The notes: generated from the sequence alone by a model not told the origin. A stretch of 64,000 nt of DNA from Dimorphilus gyrociliatus (GCA_904063045.1 CAJFCJ010000002.1:4435645-4499644), one strand, 5' to 3'; positions 39,164-49,917 are shown, counted from the stretch's first letter. Numbers and translations: made by a program.

Positions 39164-40500
39164 CAAAATATATGAGAATATTTACCCGGCATACAATATA
39201 TTAAATACTAACATATATAGGCCCAAATTTATACTTATGAATACTTATACATATATACAAAGGAATACGAGGATATTACGATTCTTTCAAGGAATATTAA
39301 TATCTTAATCTAGTACTAACAAGATCCGAGTAGAATATAGGCATTTTATTATCTGCTGTTTTATAAATTTATCATAACTTACTTTCATTATAGCTAGTTA
39401 CCATGGTTTATTATTTGTTAAGAAAAGCGTAGGCTGAGTGCATCTTTTATTGCTGGCCAAGCGGCAGTGAAAGGCATCATCCTACCTTAAATAGGCAATA
39501 ATATATCTACGCTTCAAGTAAACAAAACTTGTTTTTTAAAAAAAAAACAAGTCATATATACTGTATATATATATGAAATAAACCATGTTGTAATTAATTA
39601 GACAGACTGAAAAAAAACTCAATCAAGTTAATCACTATCGCTTTTTTTTATATATTTAAATAATTATCACATTTTATCACCGTTTTGTGCTTATAATCGC
39701 TTGTTTTTGCTTTTTTCCTTTTCAGAACAAATGAAAAAGTGAACTTATTTAAAAAAATTGAATATTAAAATTTATCAAGCTCCGCCGCTTCAGCATTAGA
39801 ATAATACTTCACACTGCAAAAATAAAGAATATTGTTAAGAATACAACAATCAGCATTGAAAATTCATTTTCTTCTAAACATATATTAGTATTATGTCAAT
39901 TAATGTGTAATAAGTACTTTTTGGAAATAAATCAATTGTTATTTTAACTGTAAAGAACTTGATATATTTTCCCTTTGTCTATGAAAATTTGTCTAGAAAC
40001 AGTCCCAGCTTCTCTTTAGGAAATATATATATATATATATATATACATATTTAGGACATGTTAATAAGAAGGATACATTTTTATTGTTAAAGAATAAACC
40101 AACTTTTAACTGTACGAATATTTGTTAAATGTGTCGATACTGCCAACATTACTCACTTAACAAACGTGTTTTTATGTAAACGTTTAACAAGGATACTGTT
40201 ATAAAAATTTTACCGAAACTGTAAAATAGAGAAGTTTATATTATTTTAATTCCTGATTTTTATGTTCAATTTTAAGAAATAAGATAGGAGGGTTCTATTT
40301 TGTATGATTCATGTTCCTTTGTGGTATAGTGCTTTCTCTCATGACCACCTAGTTCAAGTAACATTGCCATGTTCAATTGTTAAAGCCTTTTTCTCTCTAA
40401 TAGAAAAGGACAGGCCTTCTTTTGGTTTTGAGAGGCCGTTGAGCTTTCGATCACGATTCAATCAGTTAGCGATTATTTAAACTTGAGTTAACTAGCAAAA

Positions 40501-42192
40501 ATGAAGTTAGCAGCCACTATATTAATTTGCATTGTAATTTCTCTCGATGGAGCTTCAATCGAAAGCCAACTTTTTGCTGAGAAGTTTTTGGTTCGTTTCA
40601 ATTATATGACAGATAGTAGAACGAACAATCAACAACCATCAGCGTTGAAAAAATCTCCAAGCAGCATGCAAACAGCCATAAAGGACTATCAAAGAGACAA
40701 TGGATTGGTGGTAACCGGAGATTTGTCCAGAGAAACCTTGGAGCTTATGAGCCTACCTAGATGTGGTAATACAAGATCCGATGTAAGAGATAAGTCATAT
40801 TTTACCTTCAGTTTAGATAGGATAAACAAAAATATTTACTTCCCACTTGCCTAGATCTGTACAATCCTTCTCTCAAGTTTATATTTTTTTAAGAATACGT
40901 TTCAACCTATAAATTTAAACAATCTGTAACACAGGCCATGATCTAAACCTATTTATATTTTCGTAACGTCCCGTACCACCTAAATTATAGGCCTTCTTTA
41001 TATCTTTAATGAAAATTTTTTATATTCTTTTATGAGAAATCATGTTTTTTCCCATGAACAGAATATATATGATGCCATTGCTAGTAAGAGACGCCGCCGT
41101 CGTAGATATGCTTTCTCGAGTACAAAGTGGAATTCTGATTTTCTTACATATCGTGTCAGTCCGTTCACAAATGACCTTAGCAAAAGTCAGGTTTTGTCAG
41201 CAATAGAAAAGGGATTCAAGATATGGTCCGATCATTCTATGTTAAAGTTTAAGAGGGTAGAATATAAAGCCAACTTGGAGCTCTCGTTCTATAAGGGAAG
41301 TCACCAAGATGGCTATGCTTTTGATGGTAAGGGAGGCGTTCTTGCTCACGCTTTCTACCCCCGAACTGGTCTTATTCATTTCGATGATGATGAATTATGG
41401 AGTACCAGTAACAATGATATCCTACTCTCTCAAGTAGCAGCCCACGAAATTGGCCATGGACTTGGTCTGAAACATTCGTCAGATAAAAATGCGATCATGT
41501 ACGCCTCATATAAATATAAGGGAGCGAATTTTAATATAGAAACAGATGATAGGAAAGGCATTGAGGAATTGTACGGATGTAACCCTACAAAAAAATGCTA
41601 TAAAGAAGGAAAACCAAAGAAAGGAGATAGCTGCTTCTCCCCTAAAGGTCTAGTAAGGACTTCTAAGAATGAAACAAAATTTATGAAAGATATCGATATT
41701 GGAGACCTTGTTCAATCAGAAAATGGTTTTAGTAAAGTGATTGGCTGGCTCCATAGAGATGAAGAGAAACTTGAAAAATTTTTTGTTTTAAAAAATGAAT
41801 TAGGTTTAAATTTAAAAGTCACTGGTGAACACTTGATAGCAATTGAAAAAGATGGTCAAATTCAATATCAAAGAGCATATGAAACAACCAAAAGAGATTT
41901 TTTAATAAATATTGATGAATTTGGTAGAAAATCAAGACAAAAAATCACTGAAATAGATGTAATTGAGGAAAAAGGCATTTATGCTCCCTTGACTGATGAT
42001 GGAACTATCGTAGTAGATAGTAACCTAGCATCTTGTTATGCTGTTGTTAATAGTCATCAAATAGGTCATTTGGTATTTACTCCTTTGAGATGGATGTCAA
42101 ATTGGACAAGCGCTTTTCCACTTGAACACTCGGCTGAATTAATAACAAAATATCTTGGTCCAGTTGCTGAATTCCTGGGAATGTTCTCTTAA
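40501..42192 (+). CDS. Secreted matrix metalloproteinase (M10A) fused C-terminally to a Hedgehog-type Hint/Hog autoprocessing domain
   Basis: Exon 1 (40501-40782) has a signal peptide, PG-binding-like prodomain and cysteine switch PRCG. Exon 2 (41062-42192) has a furin site RRRRRR|Y, structural-Zn HQDGYAFDG...LAHAF...HFD, HEIGHGLGLKH and a Met-turn. It continues into DS|CFSPKG...DIGDLV...VTGEHLI...GIYAPLTDDGTIVVD...ASCYA and SHQIGHLVFTPLRW. Confidence 0.93.
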
Positions 42193-42558
42193 TAAAAATT
42201 GACTCAAAATAATCTCTTTCATCCTTTTTGATATTCTATAATTCTACGTATTAGACAAAAAAACATCTTGAACGTTGTTTATCAGTCTCTGGCCCGGAAA
42301 TTTTAATACAAATTTCATTAATGAAATTATTTGTAAACATATAGATAAATAAATAGAATTTTCAATTCTGTATTATTTACTAAAGACGACAATCTGTAGA
42401 ATTTAATGCAAAGTATTCAATAACAGCTAGATCGTGCTGTAAAGCGGGCTTTTAATTCATTGCTAATAATGAGTCATATCCCTTACCTTTTGTATATTTA
42501 AACAGAGTTTGAAAAGAGTAAGAAAATTGATAGCTGTTTAGAATTTCAATCGTAAATT

Positions 42559-42561
<3 letters not shown>

Positions 42562-42594
<33 letters not shown>
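42562..42594. repeat. (AT)n microsatellite followed by AT-rich low-complexity sequence
   Basis: Read directly. Confidence 0.9.
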
Positions 42595-42595
<1 letters not shown>

Positions 42596-43122
42596 TGTAT
42601 ATACAGTATATAGTATATATAAGGTATTATACTATATATTAGTATATATATATACTGTATATGTGTGAAAATCTAGATAAAGAAATTCATCAGTAATGCA
42701 CATTAATATTTTATATCAGTAACTTTTTAAATATAAAATACTTTACTTACAAAGCTCTATGGTCATATTAGACAACTAATTTATCAATAAAGTCAAATAG
42801 ATTTGACATCGAAGAAATTCTGTCTTAATAATGCTTGCTACTGATAAGAACGTGTGCTTATATATCCATATCAGCCTATTTTTACGAGTGTCTGATAAAA
42901 TTTTTAAATTACTGTGTGAGAATTTTTATTTGATGTTTTTTGGTAAAAAACCCAAAAATACTGATCGCTAACAATGGAATTTCGGTATTAAAGGGAAATT
43001 AAATAATTATTTGATAGAGTGAGGTAATTATTTTTCGTTAAAATTTGTAATTTATACATAATTTTGGATTGTTACTTTGTTACTAGGGAAAAAAAATAAA
43101 CAAACGAAAAAAATTTTTAAAT

Positions 43123-46100
43123 ATGAACAGTGCAAATGAGAATGATAAATGTAAAATTAGGATTATTGGAACAGATGTTTATGAGGTTTCATTTCAAATT
43201 AAGATAAAAGGTGACTCTTTAAAGAGAAGTATAGATCATTTGACTTATAGGTTTATCATTGATGATGAACCCAAAGCGTATACTTTTAAAACAAGAGAAA
43301 TATCTTTAACCGGTATTAAACCTAATTCAGTAAATAAGGTGAAAATTGAAAGCTTTTACTCAGAATACGATACATTTAAAATATCTAATGAAGTTATTAT
43401 AAAATGCCCGAAAAAACCCCCACCTCCGGTTATACAAACTGTGCCAATTGATGAAGCTTCTCAGATGACCATAAGATGGAAAAAACCTTATTCCATGCAG
43501 AAAGTTAAGAAAAAAAAAGATATTTGTTTCTATAGAGTATTCATGAGTGATAAGCAAATTGGAGAAGTTGATGCTGCTGATATATCATATGATAATTACT
43601 ATAAATTTCCGATACATAAAAGCGGAAATGAACAATATTCAGATATATATGTCAGATCATATGCTGGAGAGAACATTACAACTGGAGATAGTCGGGAAAA
43701 AGTTTATTGTATATCCGAGAGTGAAAACTCGAATATAATTCCAGTTACATTCCTAAATTTTAACGAACAGTCACCAGTAACAAGTATTCAGGAAATCAGT
43801 ACAAAGAGGATTGTTATTAACTGGAGTGTACATAAAGCAGCTCGCGATCCACCAACTATTGGATTTCATTTGATAAAGAATAATGAACTTCACGGTTCAA
43901 TATTACCGCCTGAACAAACTTCCTTTGAGCTAACTGAATGTATTTTGGGGGAAACGTTATCATTACAACTCATTCAAATATTCGCTAAGAATAGTTTAAA
44001 TTGTAAACAATATGAAACATATGATTTAGTCTCCTCAATACCAGCTACTCCTGAAGACTTTATAAAATTTTACATAAGAGGATCGCCTCTAATATGCAGA
44101 TTTGGAAAAAAGATTACTTTTAATTATACTAATTTAAATTGTCCAATAGATGGCGTAAAACTTGTAAATTTAACGGAAAATTCTGCTAAAATAACTTGGA
44201 AGACGAAAAATTTGGACGATAATAAACATTTTATTGATATAAATAATTTTTTAGTTAAGTGGTGGCCTGGAGAGTATTCCAAGGAAAATGTAAAAGTTTC
44301 CAATACTGAGGATAGGGAATTTATGATGGACAATTTAATACAAGGTCTACAATATACTGTTGTTGTTGAATCGTTAAGGGAGGAACTCAATACACAAATG
44401 AGCGACCAATTAGTAATCTATTCAGAAAAATCAGCTCCATTAAAATTTCAGATGATTACTTTGAAATCACCGATAACGAATTTGGAAGTGGTGGAATCAA
44501 ACTCATCATCGATTAAACTTCAGTGGAGAAATATGCTTGATTCACCAGTTCATCCTATGTGCTTTAGAATTGATGCCACTCTTAGAAACTCATCCGAGAA
44601 AGTTTCAGCGTTAATAGTTGACTCTGATAAAGAGACAGCACTAATCACTAATTTGAAAGAAAAATCGAAATATCTCATTTCATTTACAGTTGTGACAAAG
44701 GAATATATGGAGAATTATTCTGAAGTGCATTCCTCTGAAATACTTGAAAACGATGAGCCTCCGCCTAAAGATGTTTGGCTTCCGAGAACAAATATCTTGG
44801 GAATGACCTCCGGTGCTGATCCCCCATCGGACATTCACTTCATTAAAGCTACACTAACTTCTATTATGGTTTCGTGGGAACCGGTTACAATATATGGCTC
44901 TTATAGACACCAAGGAAGTTTCCTTAAGTGGGCGGAAGTAGATCAATTTGGGGATACTCAATCAGAAAATGAAGATGAAGATTACTTTAAAATGGCAGTT
45001 GAATCTAATAACGCGATTATATCCAATTTGAAACCAGCTGCTTATTATAAAGTCTTTGTCGAATCCGTAATAAGCGTTAAATTAGATTTGGACGATAAAA
45101 ACTCGCAGAGAGATACAATTCTCCAAAAATCGAAAGTATACTCTTTCAAGATGGAAATTACTTGTCCATCCCCAAAACCTTTTATCACTGGATTCACAGC
45201 AACCTCCATCTCCGTTGGATGGAGGAAGCCTATTTTATTTGTAGATATCGGGACTGGTGAAGACGGAAGTCCGAGATATCAAAAATTGAATCTAATGGGT
45301 TATAAACTGAGAATAAATGATAGGCCACCTGTTATTTTGCCACCCTCCAAACAAGAATTCAAGGTAAAAGAATGCAAGCAAGGAGAGAAGACTAGAATCG
45401 TTCTTATTGCACTTACTAGTACACAACTGGAGGAAAATGATAAGAATAGTGTTAGGTCGTCAACTGATTCTGAGAGATCTCTTGACAAGGAATACAATAG
45501 TTCTAATTTTACGTTATCCTCAAGCGTAGAGAATGACTGTGTTGAATCTTTCTCCAAAGAGTTATACTTTATTATACCACAGAAGGAGATCGGACAACTT
45601 TCAGAGTGTGGTATATCATATTTAAAATCGGATACTGATGATGTAAATAACGAAAATATGGAGTTAAATTGGGATATTTACGGTTCTAGAGAAAATGTCA
45701 AAAAGGTTCGAGTGACTTACGGTAATTTAGCAGAGAAAGAGAAAAGGGAAACAATCTTCCTTGATCCGTTATCATCGGTAGAAATACTACCAATATTAGA
45801 GCAATCATGTATTCAAGAAGTTGTTGTAACTCTTTACTCAAAGAACAACAAATTAAAACCATCTTCTATTAAATTTCACTGTGCTACACCCGAAAGACTC
45901 TTCTCTCCAACTATTTTTGTTAGCAATACTACATCCGATGAATTCTTGATAGAATGGAATGAACCAGAGCTTTGGGATCTTGAAAGCAATACTTATCAGT
46001 TATATATAAATGAAGAGAAAACTAAACCGCTGCTGAAGTTGGATCAAAGGATGCTATCAATAAACCGTAACCAAGAACTGCAAAGAGTACAGTTACAGGC

Positions 46101-48440
46101 AATATCTAATTCTGAAGGCATAGAGAATTCGTATTTGTCAAACATCTTAGAAGTTCTCCCTGTTGCAACAGAGATATTTGCCATATCCGTAGATGATGTT
46201 ACCGACACAGCCATAGACTTGAGCTGGAAGTCTTATTCAGAAGGTTCAGATTTTCATGAATATGAGCTTGTTTGGAAGAATGAAGAATTTGATAGTCTAA
46301 TAACAAAAAAAACAAGAATCAGAAAAGGAGAAAAAAATTGCGTCATTCATAAATGTCATCCTGGAACTGTCTATTACATTACTCTATACGCAATTGATAA
46401 ATCAGACAATATCTTGAGTAAAACGGTTGAGACTTGTATAGAAACTTCAGCTTTTCCAGAAAAGCCCAAGTTGCGAATATCATCAATAAATTTAGAATCA
46501 ATTACAGTTTGTTGGGATGAATGCAGGACTTTCGGCCGGGCAGAAATTATTATTTATAAAATATATGTTAATAGTATATTTGAAAAAGCTGTTCCATCCG
46601 ATCAACTATATTTTACTTATTGCAAAGTTTATCCTCTAAAGCAGTATGCCTTTCAAGTTCAAGCTGTGACAGCAGGAAACTATTCGGATAGTGAATTATC
46701 AGATACTGTTGTAGCTACCTTGCCCAGGTTTAAACCTCCATTTTTAGAAGATTCATTTCCTTTTGATAGGGATACTTTCATAGTTTGCTGGGAACCTCCT
46801 CATATCGAAAATCTAGGTTCTTATTAATATATATATATGGTATTTTATCTTAATTGTTGATTCTCGACAGAAATAAAGTATTTTAAACTTATATGCCAAG
46901 ATGAAAAAATGGGTGATGTTGTTCAAGTTATTTCTGATCTCGACAATTTCACAACAAAAGCAGAACTAAAAAATCTGGGTATTGGAATATTTAATATTTA
47001 TTTAGAAATTCAAACTTGTGAATCGAAGAAAATTTTTAAATCTGGAATCTTAAGAATTGTTCAAGGAATTAGGCCTAATCCTCCAACGATTTCTCTATTA
47101 TTAGTTGACCTAAAGGAGAGATTAGCTTGTAAGAAATTATGCTGCGACTTAATAAATGAACGAGATAAATTAATAAGTGTAATTAATAGCTCGCATAGAA
47201 ATCTTGTAAGTGATTTTTCCTTATATCTTTACTATTAGCTTTACTTTATGTATGATATTAATTTTATTTTATAAAGGTTCAAACAAGAGCGAGAGGATAC
47301 TTGATCAATGTAAATTTTCAATTATTGAGATGTTTACGGTTTTTGAGACTGTCATCACATTCTATTAAAGTTCGCCTTCGATGGGTAAAACCTCAAGATA
47401 ATCCTGAAGTTCCTGTCTCCGGTTATCAAGTAGTAGTCAATGGAAAATTATATGGCTCTATATTAAATAAAACAGTCAATCATATAGAGCTACAGCTTAG
47501 CCCAAAAACCTTAAAGTATAAAATATCAATGGTCTCCGTCTGCAGTAAAAAGCAATGTATAAGCAAACATTCAGAGGCTATTGAATTTTTAACGAAACCA
47601 TTTTTACCTTTCCACTACTTTGCTTTTTTTGACAATTTGGGAAGTATTTTTGAACAGAGCCTTAAAATCGAAAAGCATATGCCAATATCTAGGAATATGC
47701 AGATAAAATTTGCTAAATGGAGTATATCTTTAACCTCTCTTTTGGCAGTAAACATTTTTGATGGAAATGTACAGAATTTGACATCTTTCAGAGGATCAAA
47801 TTATCCAACAGCTTTATTATTTTGGTCAAATTTGAATCCATATTCATTTGAAATGCTAAAATGGTTTGCCAAATTTGCTGAATCAACTAAACTAAGAGTA
47901 TTTCTTTTTTAATTTTGAGTATTTGAGCAGACTAATAAATACAAATTCTTTAATTTTAACTCTACAGGCAAGCTTCATATCGATACTTTCTTCGAAAAGT
48001 ATCATTAGCAATTATGCAAGAGAAATTGTTGCTCATAAAATAAATCAAACTATTAGGAGAAATGACAATTATGTACATCACTTTGCATCAAATTCCTCAA
48101 CTTATAATAAAGGTTGTGGCAAAGGTAAATAGTACGGTGTGTTAATCATTGATAATAATATTACTTTTCATTCTAGACATTCTCTTGTCACTCGGTGTGA
48201 AAGGTGTTCCAACAGTAATTGTTATACATCCAAAAGGTAGTCTCTTTTTATTAATTGATTATTAAAAAATGTAAATAATCATCTATTTCCATAGATAATA
48301 TTGTATGGAAAGGAAGATATTGTGCCCAGAATTATGAACATTTTGAAACTTTCATGTCGTATGTTTTAACTGCTGAAGGTAGAGAAGATATGACAAATCC
48401 TTGGAAATTTAACAATAACTTTGCATCAGCCAGTAATTAA
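43123..48440 (+). CDS. Intracellular fibronectin type III repeat protein with a C-terminal thioredoxin-like fold (~1700 aa)
   Basis: A 3.7 kb first exon holds serial FN3 motifs (e.g. MTIRWKKP, IKLQW...NLKEKSKYLISF, ISVGWRKP, ITVCWDE...YAFQVQAV). Five further phase-consistent exons end with TALLFWSN...GVKGVPTVIVIHPKDNIVWKGRYC...*. No signal peptide. Confidence 0.85.
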
Positions 48441-48838: not shown

Positions 48839-49917
48839 CTAAAAGCTCAAGGTAACAAATTCTTTGTTACCGCTGGCTAGACTTTTTTTGCACAATTCGG
48901 CCAAATGGGTTGCCATGAGAACTTGATTAGGTTTCACGATTATTTCCTCCGTTCCGTTAGTAGCTTTTACAAAATGACTTAGAACTTCCTTATAGGCCTC
49001 TGCATATCTTTCAGTACAATCTTGTATCATGGGATCAATTCTTTCTCCCTCTTCATTAAGATGTTTAACCAACTTATGGCGCTTATTATCGCTTTGTAAA
49101 GTACCTTTACTACCAAACACTTCTAATCGCTGATCATAGCCTTGAACAGCATTTCTACTCACTTCAATGTTACCAATGATTGAATTTTCAAACGTTATAG
49201 TGATGCAACAGCTATCAACATCTCCTTGTTCTGCATACAATTCATCAGTAGCGCTACCAACTGCATAAATTGAAGTAGGCTTAGAATTGGCTAGCCAACA
49301 TATTATATCTATATCGTGAATAGCACTATCAAAAAATATGCCAGGAGAACTTTTCAAATAATCAAGAGAAACCATGGCTGGCGGATCCCTTGAAGTGGTC
49401 TTGATAACCCTTACGTTCCCTATTTCTCCCTTTCTAACTAAATCATATATCTCTCTAAATTGGGGATCAAATCTTCTTTGAAAATTCACCATCAGATTCA
49501 GGCCTACATTAAATTGAATAACAATAATGATATTGATAAAGAATTTATAATGAACAATTGCTAACCTCTAGTCTCAGCAATTTTAAACAATTCTTCAGCT
49601 TCCTTAAGTGTAGGTGTCAAAGGTTTTTCACATAAAATATGCTTTCTATATTTTAGGCATTGCTCAACTATATCCCTATGAGAGGAAAAAGGAGTAGATA
49701 TAATGCATGCTTTTATATCACTATTTTCCAAAGCAATAGTTGCTTCATTTGGAAATAAAGCTGTAATTTTGTTGATTTTCCCTTTTACCGTCTTGCTACA
49801 TTCTTTATTTTCATCCACTAAATAACGCAAATCCAGTTGTGGATGTTCATTGATGTTCTTTGCATGAATTTTGCCCATCCTTCCAACTCCAAAGAGTGTT
49901 GTTCCTAAAATTTCCAT
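48839..49917 (-). CDS. Gfo/Idh/MocA oxidoreductase, myo-inositol 2-dehydrogenase (IolG)-like
   Basis: Two exons separated by one phase-1 intron at ~49506-49566. Motifs GVGRMG, ILCEKP, NFQRRFDP, TTSRDP, GIFFDSAIHDID and GYDQRLEVFGSKG. Confidence 0.9.

What the first reader, a model, noticed from the sequence alone, without database searches (positions are those of the whole stretch)
40501..42192. MMP-Hog fusion: a matrix metalloproteinase predicted to self-cleave and possibly sterol-anchor itself like Hedgehog
Seen: a complete secreted MMP, with signal peptide, PRCG cysteine switch, hexa-Arg furin site, HEIGHGLGLKH at 41443-41475 and Met-turn at 41497. In place of a hemopexin domain it has a Hedgehog-type Hint domain starting at Cys 41632 (GDS|CFSP), with block-B TGEH (41821-41832), YAPLTxxGTIVVD, ASCY (Cys 42034) and a sterol-recognition-like segment SHQIGHLVFTPLRW. 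Established: Hog domains perform an N-S acyl shift at Cys1 and transfer the N-terminal domain to cholesterol. Membrane-type MMPs otherwise use TM or GPI anchors. Hog domains are known behind Hedge and nematode Wrt/Grd/Qua domains and in some other lineage-specific fusions, but I do not recall an MMP partner. Inference: this could be a third way of tethering an MMP, or a built-in release switch for the protease.
Basis: partly seen in the sequence, partly recalled or inferred. Interest (0 to 1): 0.93.

Follow-up and report, generated by a model that had tools for sequence, protein, structure and literature searches.

The report
Self-cleaving metalloproteinase with a Hedgehog module
A tiny marine worm (Dimorphilus gyrociliatus) transcribes a gene that joins a complete matrix metalloproteinase to the self-cutting, lipid-attaching module of Hedgehog, so the protease probably cuts itself free and may gain a lipid anchor, a combination I found in no paper and only in this worm and its close relatives.

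Summary
The gene is DgyrCDS1940 of the annelid Dimorphilus gyrociliatus (470 aa). It has two exons, 40501-40782 and 41062-42192.

- **Architecture:** Pfam gives PG_binding_1 (1.3e-7), Peptidase_M10 (7.7e-51) and Hint PF01079 (3.6e-37).
- **Transcript:** one transcript contig with no differences spans protease, Hog domain and 3' UTR. The GT..AG splice is seen in two runs.
- **Family:** it is not a singleton. The genome has at least four MMP-Hog genes, and two more come from unnamed relatives. One of those is a syntenic orthologue at 63% full-length identity (BLASTP 68%). The six MMP domains form one clade, and a single origin of the Hog domains is not rejected.
- **Catalytic residues:** Cys1, TxxH and SCYA are invariant. 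Hint dN/dS is about 0.13.
- **This copy differs:** it has His where Drosophila Hedgehog has the sterol-activating Asp303. It also lacks about 10 residues, including the HWY hinge of the sterol-recognition region. Its paralogues keep both. His is common in nature (77 of 152 nearest Hog domains), and the D303H mutant is reported active.

Self-cleavage at Ser284|Cys285 is likely. Sterol anchoring of this copy is possible but unproven. I found no paper on the architecture. The scan had already flagged a paralogue on other DNA (s1-080177).

The parts
40501..40782 (+). Exon 1 (aa 1-94). Holds the signal peptide (about aa 1-19), the PG_binding_1-type MMP prodomain and the cysteine switch PRCG (40756-40767).
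   Evidence: Pfam PG_binding_1 at 1.3e-7. The only hydrophobic 19-mer lies at aa 1-21. The exon end is fixed by the spliced RNA contigs.
40783..41061 (+). Intron, 279 nt, GT..AG, phase 0.
   Evidence: The joint 40782>41062 is seen in runs X3 (depth 1107) and X1. The unspliced form has a depth of about 23. The orthologue L001 has an intron at the same place.
41062..42192 (+). Exon 2 (aa 95-470 plus stop). Holds the end of the prodomain, the furin site, the catalytic domain, the linker and the Hog domain.
   Evidence: A single RNA contig covers 41062-42328 with 0 differences. P0001 equals the translation.
41086..41109 (+). Furin-type site K-R6|Y (aa 103-110). The predicted mature N-terminus is Tyr110.
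   Evidence: Read directly from the sequence. Basic sites are also present in P0002, P0124, the 464-aa paralogue and P0147, but not in P0144.
41125..41577 (+). Matrixin (M10A) catalytic domain, aa 116-266. It has HEIGHGLGLKH (41443-41475) and the Met-turn (41497-41499).
   Evidence: Pfam Peptidase_M10 at 7.7e-51. PDB sequence matches to MMP-2, -1, -12 and -7 at 5e-43 to 1e-35. The model superposes on MMP-1 and MMP-2 catalytic domains at rmsd 1.2-1.5 A, TM by target 0.90-0.94.
41578..41631 (+). Lys-rich linker of 18 aa with two Cys (CNPTKKCYKEGKPKKGDS). It ends in Ser284, the residue that would carry any adduct.
   Evidence: Read from the sequence. It is present in the orthologue P0002 and absent from the paralogues. 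A relative in run X2 has an in-frame 6-nt insertion here.
41632..42039 (+). Hint core of the Hog domain, aa 285-420. Key residues are Cys1 (41632-41634), His325 at the Asp303/D46 position (41752-41754), TGEH (41821-41832) and the SCY Cys419 (42034-42036).
   Evidence: Pfam Hint at 3.6e-37. Residue-by-residue alignment to Drosophila Hh 6TD6, 1AT0 and 6TYY. The model (pLDDT 91.4) matches 6TYY and 1AT0 at TM by target 0.88-0.89, rmsd 1.9 A. dN/dS is 0.13.
42040..42189 (+). Shortened sterol/adduct-recognition region, aa 421-470. The first helix is Hh-like (SHQIGHLVFTPLRW). The loop and HWY hinge are missing. The second helix keeps Y..P.A..G.
   Evidence: Alignment to Drosophila Hh and to the paralogues. 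Predicted helices at 426-432, 434-442 and 451-469. dN/dS is 0.26.
42193..42328 (+). 3' UTR, at least to 42328.
   Evidence: The RNA contig ends at 42328 in X3 and at 42289 in X2.

Best explanation
DgyrCDS1940 is a secreted pre-pro-matrix-metalloproteinase. Its hemopexin domain is replaced by a Hedgehog-type Hog autoprocessing domain.

**Proposed course:**
1. The signal peptide takes the protein into the ER.
2. The Hog domain folds there. Cys285 attacks the Ser284 carbonyl in an N-S acyl shift, helped by Thr348 and His351 of TxxH.
3. The thioester is resolved by a nucleophile held at the interface between the Hint core and the C-terminal helix-loop-helix. His325 activates that nucleophile. It is most likely a sterol or a related lipid.
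4. This frees a 21-kDa Hog fragment and leaves the protease esterified at Ser284.
5. Furin then cuts after Arg109 in the Golgi and removes the cysteine-switch prodomain.
6. The product is an active 175-residue, matrilysin-sized protease. It would be held on membranes by the lipid and the adjacent Lys-rich tail.

**What is shown:** the gene, the transcript, the domains, the catalytic residues, the purifying selection and the family structure.

**What is inferred:** cleavage (I put it at about 0.8), lipid rather than water as the nucleophile (about 0.55), and a sterol specifically (about 0.4).
For: - **Domains:** Pfam M10 at 7.7e-51 and Hint at 3.6e-37 in one open reading frame.
- **Transcript:** one RNA contig spans both domains, and the splice is confirmed in two runs.
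- **Catalytic residues:** Cys1, TxxH and SCYA align with Drosophila C258, T326/H329 and C400. They are invariant in all six MMP-Hog proteins.
- **Fold:** the Hint fold matches at TM 0.88-0.89 and 1.9 A to 1AT0 and 6TYY. A helix-loop-helix is predicted after it.
- **Selection:** against the syntenic orthologue with saturated dS, dN/dS is 0.13 for Hint and 0.26 for the SRR. Of 28 listed differences to a 93%-identical relative, 18 fall on third codon positions (p = 8e-4).
- **His as general base:** His is the state in 77 of 152 nearest Hog domains. That includes 7 of 12 that carry a Hedgehog signalling domain. The Drosophila D303H mutant keeps cholesterolysis and accepts more sterols (PMC9163320; PDB 6TYY).
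- **Anchor logic:** a furin site with no TM or GPI segment echoes the way membrane-type MMPs are activated.
- **Conserved tail:** the tail after the Hint core would be dispensable for thioester formation alone.
Against: - No biochemical evidence exists.
- The HWY hinge and about 10 loop residues of the SRR are missing in this copy and its orthologue. In human SHH that hinge lines the cholesterol pocket, and mutations at Y435 and S436 perturb cholesterolysis (PMC7906309).
- The residue before the cut is Ser, not the Gly usual in Hedgehog. Ser does occur in 11 other Hog domains of the alignment.
- Hog domains of nematode Hh-related proteins have never been shown to transfer cholesterol (PMC2362128). 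A Hog domain does not by itself prove sterol attachment.
Confidence: 0.5

Rival explanations
1. Release switch only. The Hog domain cuts itself off, but the thioester is hydrolysed by water. This yields a soluble, matrilysin-like protease. The Hog domain would serve as a folding, ER-retention or timing device rather than a lipid transferase.
For: This copy and its orthologue have lost the HWY hinge and part of the SRR loop. The hinge matters for cholesterolysis in human SHH (PMC7906309). Many His-type Hog domains also lack HWY (49 of 77).
Against: The C-terminal helix-loop-helix and the general-base position are retained under purifying selection. Neither is needed for thioester formation alone, since the Hh-C17 fragment 1AT0 lacks the SRR.
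Confidence: 0.25
2. A different adduct. The shortened His-type tail is an adduct-recognition region in the nematode sense. It would transfer the protease to a non-cholesterol nucleophile, such as another sterol, another lipid or a matrix component. The Asp/HWY paralogues would use cholesterol.
For: Within one monophyletic family, the D-to-H change and the HWY loss go together. D303H widens sterol tolerance in Drosophila Hh (PMC9163320). Across the Hog relatives, His is associated with absence of HWY.
Against: No adduct other than cholesterol has been demonstrated for any Hog domain in the papers I read. The association is not corrected for phylogeny.
Confidence: 0.15
3. No cleavage. The Hint domain is a catalytically silent C-terminal binding module that stands in for hemopexin.
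For: None is specific to this gene. The residue before the cut (Ser) is non-canonical for Hedgehog.
Against: Every catalytic residue (Cys1, Thr and His of TxxH, the His general base, the Cys of SCYA) is kept in all six family members, despite 30-63% overall identity.
Confidence: 0.08
4. Artefact. The gene is a gene-model or assembly chimera of a separate MMP gene and a separate Hog gene.
For: None.
Against: Both domains lie in one uninterrupted ORF. One RNA contig with 0 differences spans them. The same architecture occurs in a syntenic orthologue from an independent run and in three paralogues.
Confidence: 0.02

Closest known systems
Hedgehog precursor C-terminal domain (Hh-C / Hog; Drosophila Hh, PDB 1AT0, 6TD6, 6TYY)
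   Same: The Hint fold matches (TM 0.88-0.89, rmsd 1.9 A). Cys1, TxxH and SCYA are aligned residue for residue. The first SRR helix is alike. The domain sits at the C-terminus of a secreted protein, directly after the cargo.
   Different: The cargo is a zinc protease, not the Hedge signalling domain (no PF01085). His replaces Asp303, as in the engineered D303H mutant 6TYY. The HWY hinge is absent. Ser rather than Gly precedes the cut.
Other Hog-domain fusions: nematode Warthog, Groundhog and Quahog, choanoflagellate Hoglet, lophotrochozoan Lophohog (PMC2362128, PMC9695228)
   Same: A Hog domain sits behind a lineage-specific secreted N-terminal domain. The SRR is replaced by a divergent adduct-recognition region whose adduct is unknown.
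   Different: In the papers I read, none of those cargo domains is described as an enzyme. Here the cargo is a complete, apparently active protease with its own zymogen control. Among the nearest Hog domains I also saw unpublished-looking Trypsin-, AIG1-, Peptidase_M15- and deaminase-Hog fusions from marine metagenomes.
Membrane-type MMPs (MT-MMPs, with TM or GPI anchor) and matrilysin (MMP-7/26, minimal MMPs)
   Same: It has a furin-type activation site like the MT-MMPs. After cleavage, its prodomain-plus-catalytic-domain layout without hemopexin resembles matrilysin.
   Different: There is no TM helix or GPI signal and no hemopexin domain. Any anchor would be an ester-linked lipid added by the protein's own C-terminal domain.
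Paralogues in the same genome (P0124, P0144 and a 464-aa gene on CAJFCJ010000024.1)
   Same: They have the same PG_binding + M10 + Hint architecture. The MMP domains are monophyletic (SH-aLRT 97.7). A single origin of the Hog domains is not rejected.
   Different: The paralogues are intronless and have no Cys/Lys linker. They keep Asp at the general-base position and the GIHWYG hinge. P0144 and the 464-aa paralogue (and P0147, its orthologue in an unnamed relative) lack 8 residues in the structural-zinc region. P0144 lacks a furin site.

Membership tests
Matrixin / MMP (MEROPS M10A, Pfam PF00413) | HExxHxxGxxH zinc-binding motif followed by a Met-turn | tested here: met
   HEIGHGLGLKH at 41443-41475 and AIMY with Met at 41497. 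Pfam M10 at 7.7e-51 over the whole model.
Matrixin / MMP (MEROPS M10A, Pfam PF00413) | Prodomain with a PRCG cysteine switch | tested here: met
   PRCG at 40756-40767 aligns with the PRCG of proMMP-2. PG_binding_1 at 1.3e-7.
Matrixin / MMP (MEROPS M10A, Pfam PF00413) | Catalytic-domain fold, including the structural-zinc segment | tested here: met
   The H.DGY.FDG...LAHAF and HFDDDE.W segments align with MMP-2. The model matches proMMP-3 and proMMP-10 at TM 0.88-0.89 and MMP-1 at rmsd 1.2 A.
Matrixin / MMP (MEROPS M10A, Pfam PF00413) | Proteolytic activity | not testable with these tools
   Needs expression and zymography.
Hedgehog-type Hog domain (Hint PF01079 + SRR/ARR) | Hint module above the Pfam gathering score, and the Hint fold | tested here: met
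   128.5 bits against a cutoff of 29.7. TM 0.88-0.89 to 1AT0 and 6TYY.
Hedgehog-type Hog domain (Hint PF01079 + SRR/ARR) | Cys1 nucleophile, TxxH motif and the SCYA cysteine | tested here: met
   They align to Drosophila C258, T326/H329 and C400. They are invariant in six MMP-Hog proteins.
Hedgehog-type Hog domain (Hint PF01079 + SRR/ARR) | Asp general base (Drosophila D303 / D46) that activates cholesterol | tested here: not met
   His325 occupies the column. His is the state in 77 of 152 nearest Hog domains. D303H is reported active (PMC9163320).
Hedgehog-type Hog domain (Hint PF01079 + SRR/ARR) | Sterol-recognition region: helix-loop-helix with the HWY hinge | tested here: inconclusive
   A helix-loop-helix is predicted and the first helix is conserved. 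The HWY hinge and about 10 loop residues are absent, although the paralogues have them.
Hedgehog-type Hog domain (Hint PF01079 + SRR/ARR) | Autocleavage with transfer of the N-terminal domain to cholesterol | not testable with these tools
   Needs wild type against C285A expression, DTT or hydroxylamine, clickable sterol and mass spectrometry.
Hedgehog ligand (Hh proper) | N-terminal HH_signal (Hedge) domain PF01085 | tested here: not met
   No PF01085 hit. The N-terminal part is an MMP.
Membrane-type MMP | C-terminal TM helix or GPI signal after a hemopexin domain | tested here: not met
   There is no hemopexin hit. The only hydrophobic 19-mer is the signal peptide. The furin site is present.

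The most novel reading that the evidence does not exclude
Dinophilid worms evolved a third way of tethering a matrix metalloproteinase to membranes: autocatalytic esterification to a sterol by a Hog domain. Within the same small gene family the chemistry then diverged. The Asp/HWY paralogues would attach cholesterol. The His, HWY-less copy in this window would attach a different lipid or release the enzyme. That would make the family a natural experiment on Hog adduct specificity, with an enzyme as a readable cargo.
Probability: 0.3. Interest if true: 0.85.

Novelty: new variant of a known kind. Interest (0 to 1): 0.66.

Why it matters
- **Cargo range:** in the papers I read, Hog domains are described behind signalling or structural cargo domains, and cholesterol transfer is proven only for Hedgehog. 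An active zymogen protease as cargo would widen the known uses of protein cholesterolysis.
- **MMP localisation:** it would add a lipid-ester anchor to the TM and GPI anchors known for MMPs.
- **A practical assay:** protease activity and membrane partitioning could serve as read-outs for Hog autoprocessing.
- **A natural comparison:** one monophyletic family holds both Asp/HWY and His/HWY-less Hog domains. That directly tests what these two features contribute to adduct choice, a question so far addressed with engineered mutants (D303H).
- **Limit:** the family looks confined to dinophilid annelids, so its general biological reach may be small.

Tried and rejected
1. **Word-index search, Hog region only.** It returned three proteins and was too insensitive. 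The exhaustive HMMER search replaced it.
2. **Profile search with five MMP-Hog proteins.** Only 8000 candidates were scored, and even the known paralogues P0124 and P0144 were missed. Its negative result is weak.
3. **Searches for the architecture elsewhere.** All found nothing beyond the Dimorphilus group:
   - AFDB fold clusters gave only the Dimorphilus paralogue A0A7I8WA82 over both domains.
   - ESM Atlas clusters of 50 or more members gave nothing.
   - The JGI metagenome scan gave 24 loci, all matching the Hog part only.
   - Only the best 150 of 2728 Hog hits could be inspected. Distant MMP-Hog fusions are therefore not excluded.
4. **Free 'quick' and FastTree Hog trees.** They split the six Hog domains into two groups. 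I do not read this as two fusions. The tree with them held together had a higher likelihood (+15 and +19 lnL; p-AU 0.72 and 0.79), and the MMP domains are one clade.
5. **A failed labelling attempt.** I tried to mark Hedgehog proteins with the N-terminus of P0122. That sturgeon model carries a second Hint piece, so the attempt failed. I redid it with P0362.
6. **Origin of the Hog domain.** Hedgehog or another Hog gene could not be resolved. The nearest relatives are unnamed metagenomic proteins, and deep branches are unsupported.
7. **Species of two runs.** SRR23372229 and SRR31984831 could not be identified.
8. **Model coordinates.** They are not exposed, so active-site distances were not measured.
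9. **Alternative splice.** I considered a GGTAAT donor at 40767 with an acceptor at 41037. RNA supports only 40782>41062.

Full report
**What is there**

The window comes from the annelid Dimorphilus gyrociliatus. The gene is annotated as DgyrCDS1940 (P0001, 470 aa). Translating 40501-42192 gives one frame interrupted only between 40783 and 41061.

Pfam finds three domains:
- PG_binding_1 in exon 1 (1.3e-7).
- Peptidase_M10 in exon 2 (7.7e-51, model positions 1-159 of 159).
- Hint PF01079, also in exon 2 (3.6e-37, 128.5 bits against a cutoff of 29.7).

These are PRCG, the six-Arg site, HEIGHGLGLKH, the Met-turn, Ser|Cys-Phe at 41632, TGEH and ASCY. The only hydrophobic 19-residue stretch is the N-terminal signal peptide, so there is no TM or GPI-type tail.

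**Is it one transcript?**

Yes. In run X3, a run of one organism that holds 91% of the sampled words, a 1273-nt contig with no differences covers 41062-42328. That stretch runs from the furin site through the catalytic domain, linker and Hog domain to the stop and 136 nt of 3' UTR.

- The joint 40782>41062 (GT..AG, skipping 279 nt) has word depth about 1100 in X3. It also appears in a coral metatranscriptome (X1).
- The unspliced form has depth about 23.
- A marine metatranscriptome (X2) holds a relative about 93% identical that is also contiguous from the end of the protease into the Hog domain. Its only indels inside the coding sequence add 6 nt in the linker, which keeps the frame.

Of the 28 differences listed for X2 within the Hog domain, 18 fall on third codon positions (p = 8e-4). 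An assembly or gene-model chimera is excluded.

**The protease half**

The protease looks like a working furin-activated MMP.
- The N-terminal 284 residues match proMMP-2, -1, -3, -7 and MMP-12 at 5e-43 to 1e-35. The cysteine switch, the structural-zinc segment and the catalytic motif are aligned.
- The AlphaFold model of the whole protein has pLDDT 88.1. It superposes on MMP-1 and MMP-2 catalytic domains at 1.2-1.5 A, and on proMMP-3 and proMMP-10 at TM 0.88-0.89.
- After furin cleavage at R109|Y110 and Hog cleavage at S284|C285, the product would be 175 residues, 19.8 kDa, pI 8.4. It would end in a two-Cys, Lys-rich tail.

**The Hog half**

Sequence alignment to Drosophila Hedgehog (6TD6 at 1.5e-19; 1AT0; 6TYY) pairs these residues:
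- Cys285 with C258.
- TGEH with T326/H329.
- ASCYAV with the C400 motif.
- SHQIGHLVFTPLRW with the first SRR helix.

A separate model of residues 281-470 has pLDDT 91.4. Its best solved matches are 6TYY and 1AT0, at TM by target 0.88-0.89 and rmsd 1.9 A. Inteins follow far behind. After the beta core the model has a helix-loop-helix, as proposed for the Hedgehog SRR (PMC9163320).

This copy departs from Hedgehog in two places.

*Departure 1: His for Asp.* His325 sits where Drosophila has Asp303 (D46). That Asp is the general base that activates cholesterol.
- His is exactly the residue of the engineered D303H protein (6TYY). The review PMC9163320 reports that D303H keeps its structure and its cholesterolysis, and accepts additional sterols.
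- His is also common in nature. Among the 152 Hog domains nearest to this one, 77 have His and 64 have Asp at that column.
- Seven of the 12 that carry a Hedgehog signalling domain have His.

*Departure 2: no HWY hinge.* About 10 residues, including the HWY hinge between the two SRR helices, are missing.
- In human SHH that hinge lies at the back of the modelled cholesterol pocket. Disease mutations at Y435 and S436 perturb cholesterolysis (PMC7906309).
- Among the relatives, lack of HWY goes with His: 49 of 77 His-type against 17 of 64 Asp-type. This count is not corrected for phylogeny.

**It is a gene family**

The exhaustive search with the Hog part gave 2728 hits. The orthologue P0002 scored 291 bits, and the next hit only 101 bits. 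Among the best 150, three more proteins also have an MMP domain.

- P0124 and P0144 are D. gyrociliatus proteins.
- Together with a third gene of 464 aa, they form an intronless cluster on contig CAJFCJ010000024.1.
- P0147, from an unnamed run, groups with the 464-aa paralogue.
- P0002, from another unnamed run, is the orthologue of the window's gene. It is 63% identical over the full length (BLASTP local 68%). It has the same intron position and the same neighbours, a 1248-aa FN3 gene and GFO_IDH_MocA genes.

The trees point to one fusion followed by duplications.
- The six MMP domains form one clade among 113 MMPs (SH-aLRT 97.7).
- For the Hog domains, a tree that holds the six together has a higher likelihood than the free search found (p-AU 0.72 and 0.79).
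- I read this as one fusion, then duplications that predate the split of D. gyrociliatus from these relatives.

Cys1, Thr and His of TxxH, Ser-Cys-Tyr-Ala and several SRR positions are invariant in all six, at 30-63% overall identity. Against the orthologue, synonymous sites are saturated. dN/dS is about 0.13 for Hint and 0.26 for the tail. The paralogues keep Asp and GIHWYG, so the His and HWY-less state of the window's gene is derived within the family.

**How widespread, and is it known?**

I found MMP plus Hint nowhere outside this group.
- 5.8 billion clustered proteins.
- AlphaFold DB fold clusters, where only the Dimorphilus paralogue aligns over both domains.
- Large ESM Atlas clusters.
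- A JGI metagenome scan, with Hog-only matches.

These searches have limits, listed under Tried and rejected. Full-text searches found no paper on the combination.
- The Hog-family survey (PMC2362128) lists no protease cargo.
- An annelid Hedgehog-pathway paper found no non-Hh Hog genes in Platynereis or Pygospio (PMC9695228).
- The genome paper does not mention it.

The nearest Hog domains do sit behind other enzymes in unnamed marine metagenomic proteins: Trypsin, AIG1 GTPase, Peptidase_M15 and AID/APOBEC-like deaminases. The general idea of an enzyme cargo on a Hog domain is therefore probably not unique to these worms.

**Mechanism and confidence**

- Conservation of the whole N-S acyl-shift apparatus makes self-cleavage at Ser284|Cys285 likely (about 0.8).
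- A conserved general-base position and a conserved amphipathic tail argue that the thioester goes to a bound nucleophile rather than to water (about 0.55). Neither is needed for thioester formation.
- Whether that nucleophile is cholesterol is open for this copy, because the HWY hinge is gone (about 0.4). It is more plausible for the paralogues.
- A furin site with no other anchor parallels the logic of membrane-type MMPs. That is a functional analogy, not membership.
- The biological role is unknown. A preprint states that dinophilid males dissolve the female epidermis enzymatically during hypodermic insemination (10.1101/491886, abstract seen). This is only a lead for where to look at expression.

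**Relation to earlier notes of this scan**

- Note s1-083730 made the same His and degenerate-helix point. I tested and confirm it.
- Note s1-080177 and its follow-up described the paralogue P0124 on another piece of the genome as a self-cleaving, sterol-anchored MMP. I confirmed that gene's architecture. I add that the window's gene is a diverged member of the same monophyletic family.

Noticed in passing
window 43123-46827 (+); L001 4354-8100: A single-exon ORF of 1234 aa with an FN3 array lies directly downstream. It is conserved as the downstream neighbour (1248 aa, fn3) in the orthologous locus. The GFO_IDH_MocA gene further on (window 48839-49492, minus strand; L001 10278-10931) is conserved too, so microsynteny spans several genes.
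   Followed up: partly
L003 10001-16051 (D. gyrociliatus contig CAJFCJ010000024.1): A cluster of three intronless MMP-Hog paralogues (483, 457 and 464 aa). P0144 and the 464-aa gene, plus P0147 from an unnamed relative, lack 8 residues in the structural-zinc segment of the catalytic domain. P0144 has no furin site and has PRCK instead of PRCG. Some copies may have altered stability or activation.
   Followed up: partly
proteins P0159, P0177, P0123 and others among the Hog hits: Among the nearest Hog domains are fusions to Trypsin (3), AIG1 GTPase (5), Peptidase_M15 (2), LDL-receptor class A, and NAD1/SNAD4 AID/APOBEC-like deaminase domains. Most come from unnamed marine metagenomes and metatranscriptomes. 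They look like a wider, apparently undescribed set of enzyme-Hog fusions.
   Followed up: partly
runs X1 (coral metatranscriptome) and X2 (marine metatranscriptome), laid on window 40200-42600: X1 holds the spliced transcript at about 99% identity. X2 holds a version about 93% identical, with an in-frame 6-nt insertion in the linker. D. gyrociliatus or cryptic sister lineages are therefore present in these environmental samples.
   Followed up: no
P0122 (Sonic hedgehog protein A, Acipenser ruthenus, 473 aa): This annotated sturgeon Shh model has two Hint stretches and no clean Hedge domain at its N-terminus. It looks like a faulty gene model, and it misled one of my labelling steps.
   Followed up: no
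alignment column of Drosophila D303 in 152 Hog domains: His is as common as Asp at the general-base position among these Hog domains, including proteins with a Hedgehog signalling domain. His tends to go with absence of the HWY hinge (49 of 77 against 17 of 64).
   Followed up: partly
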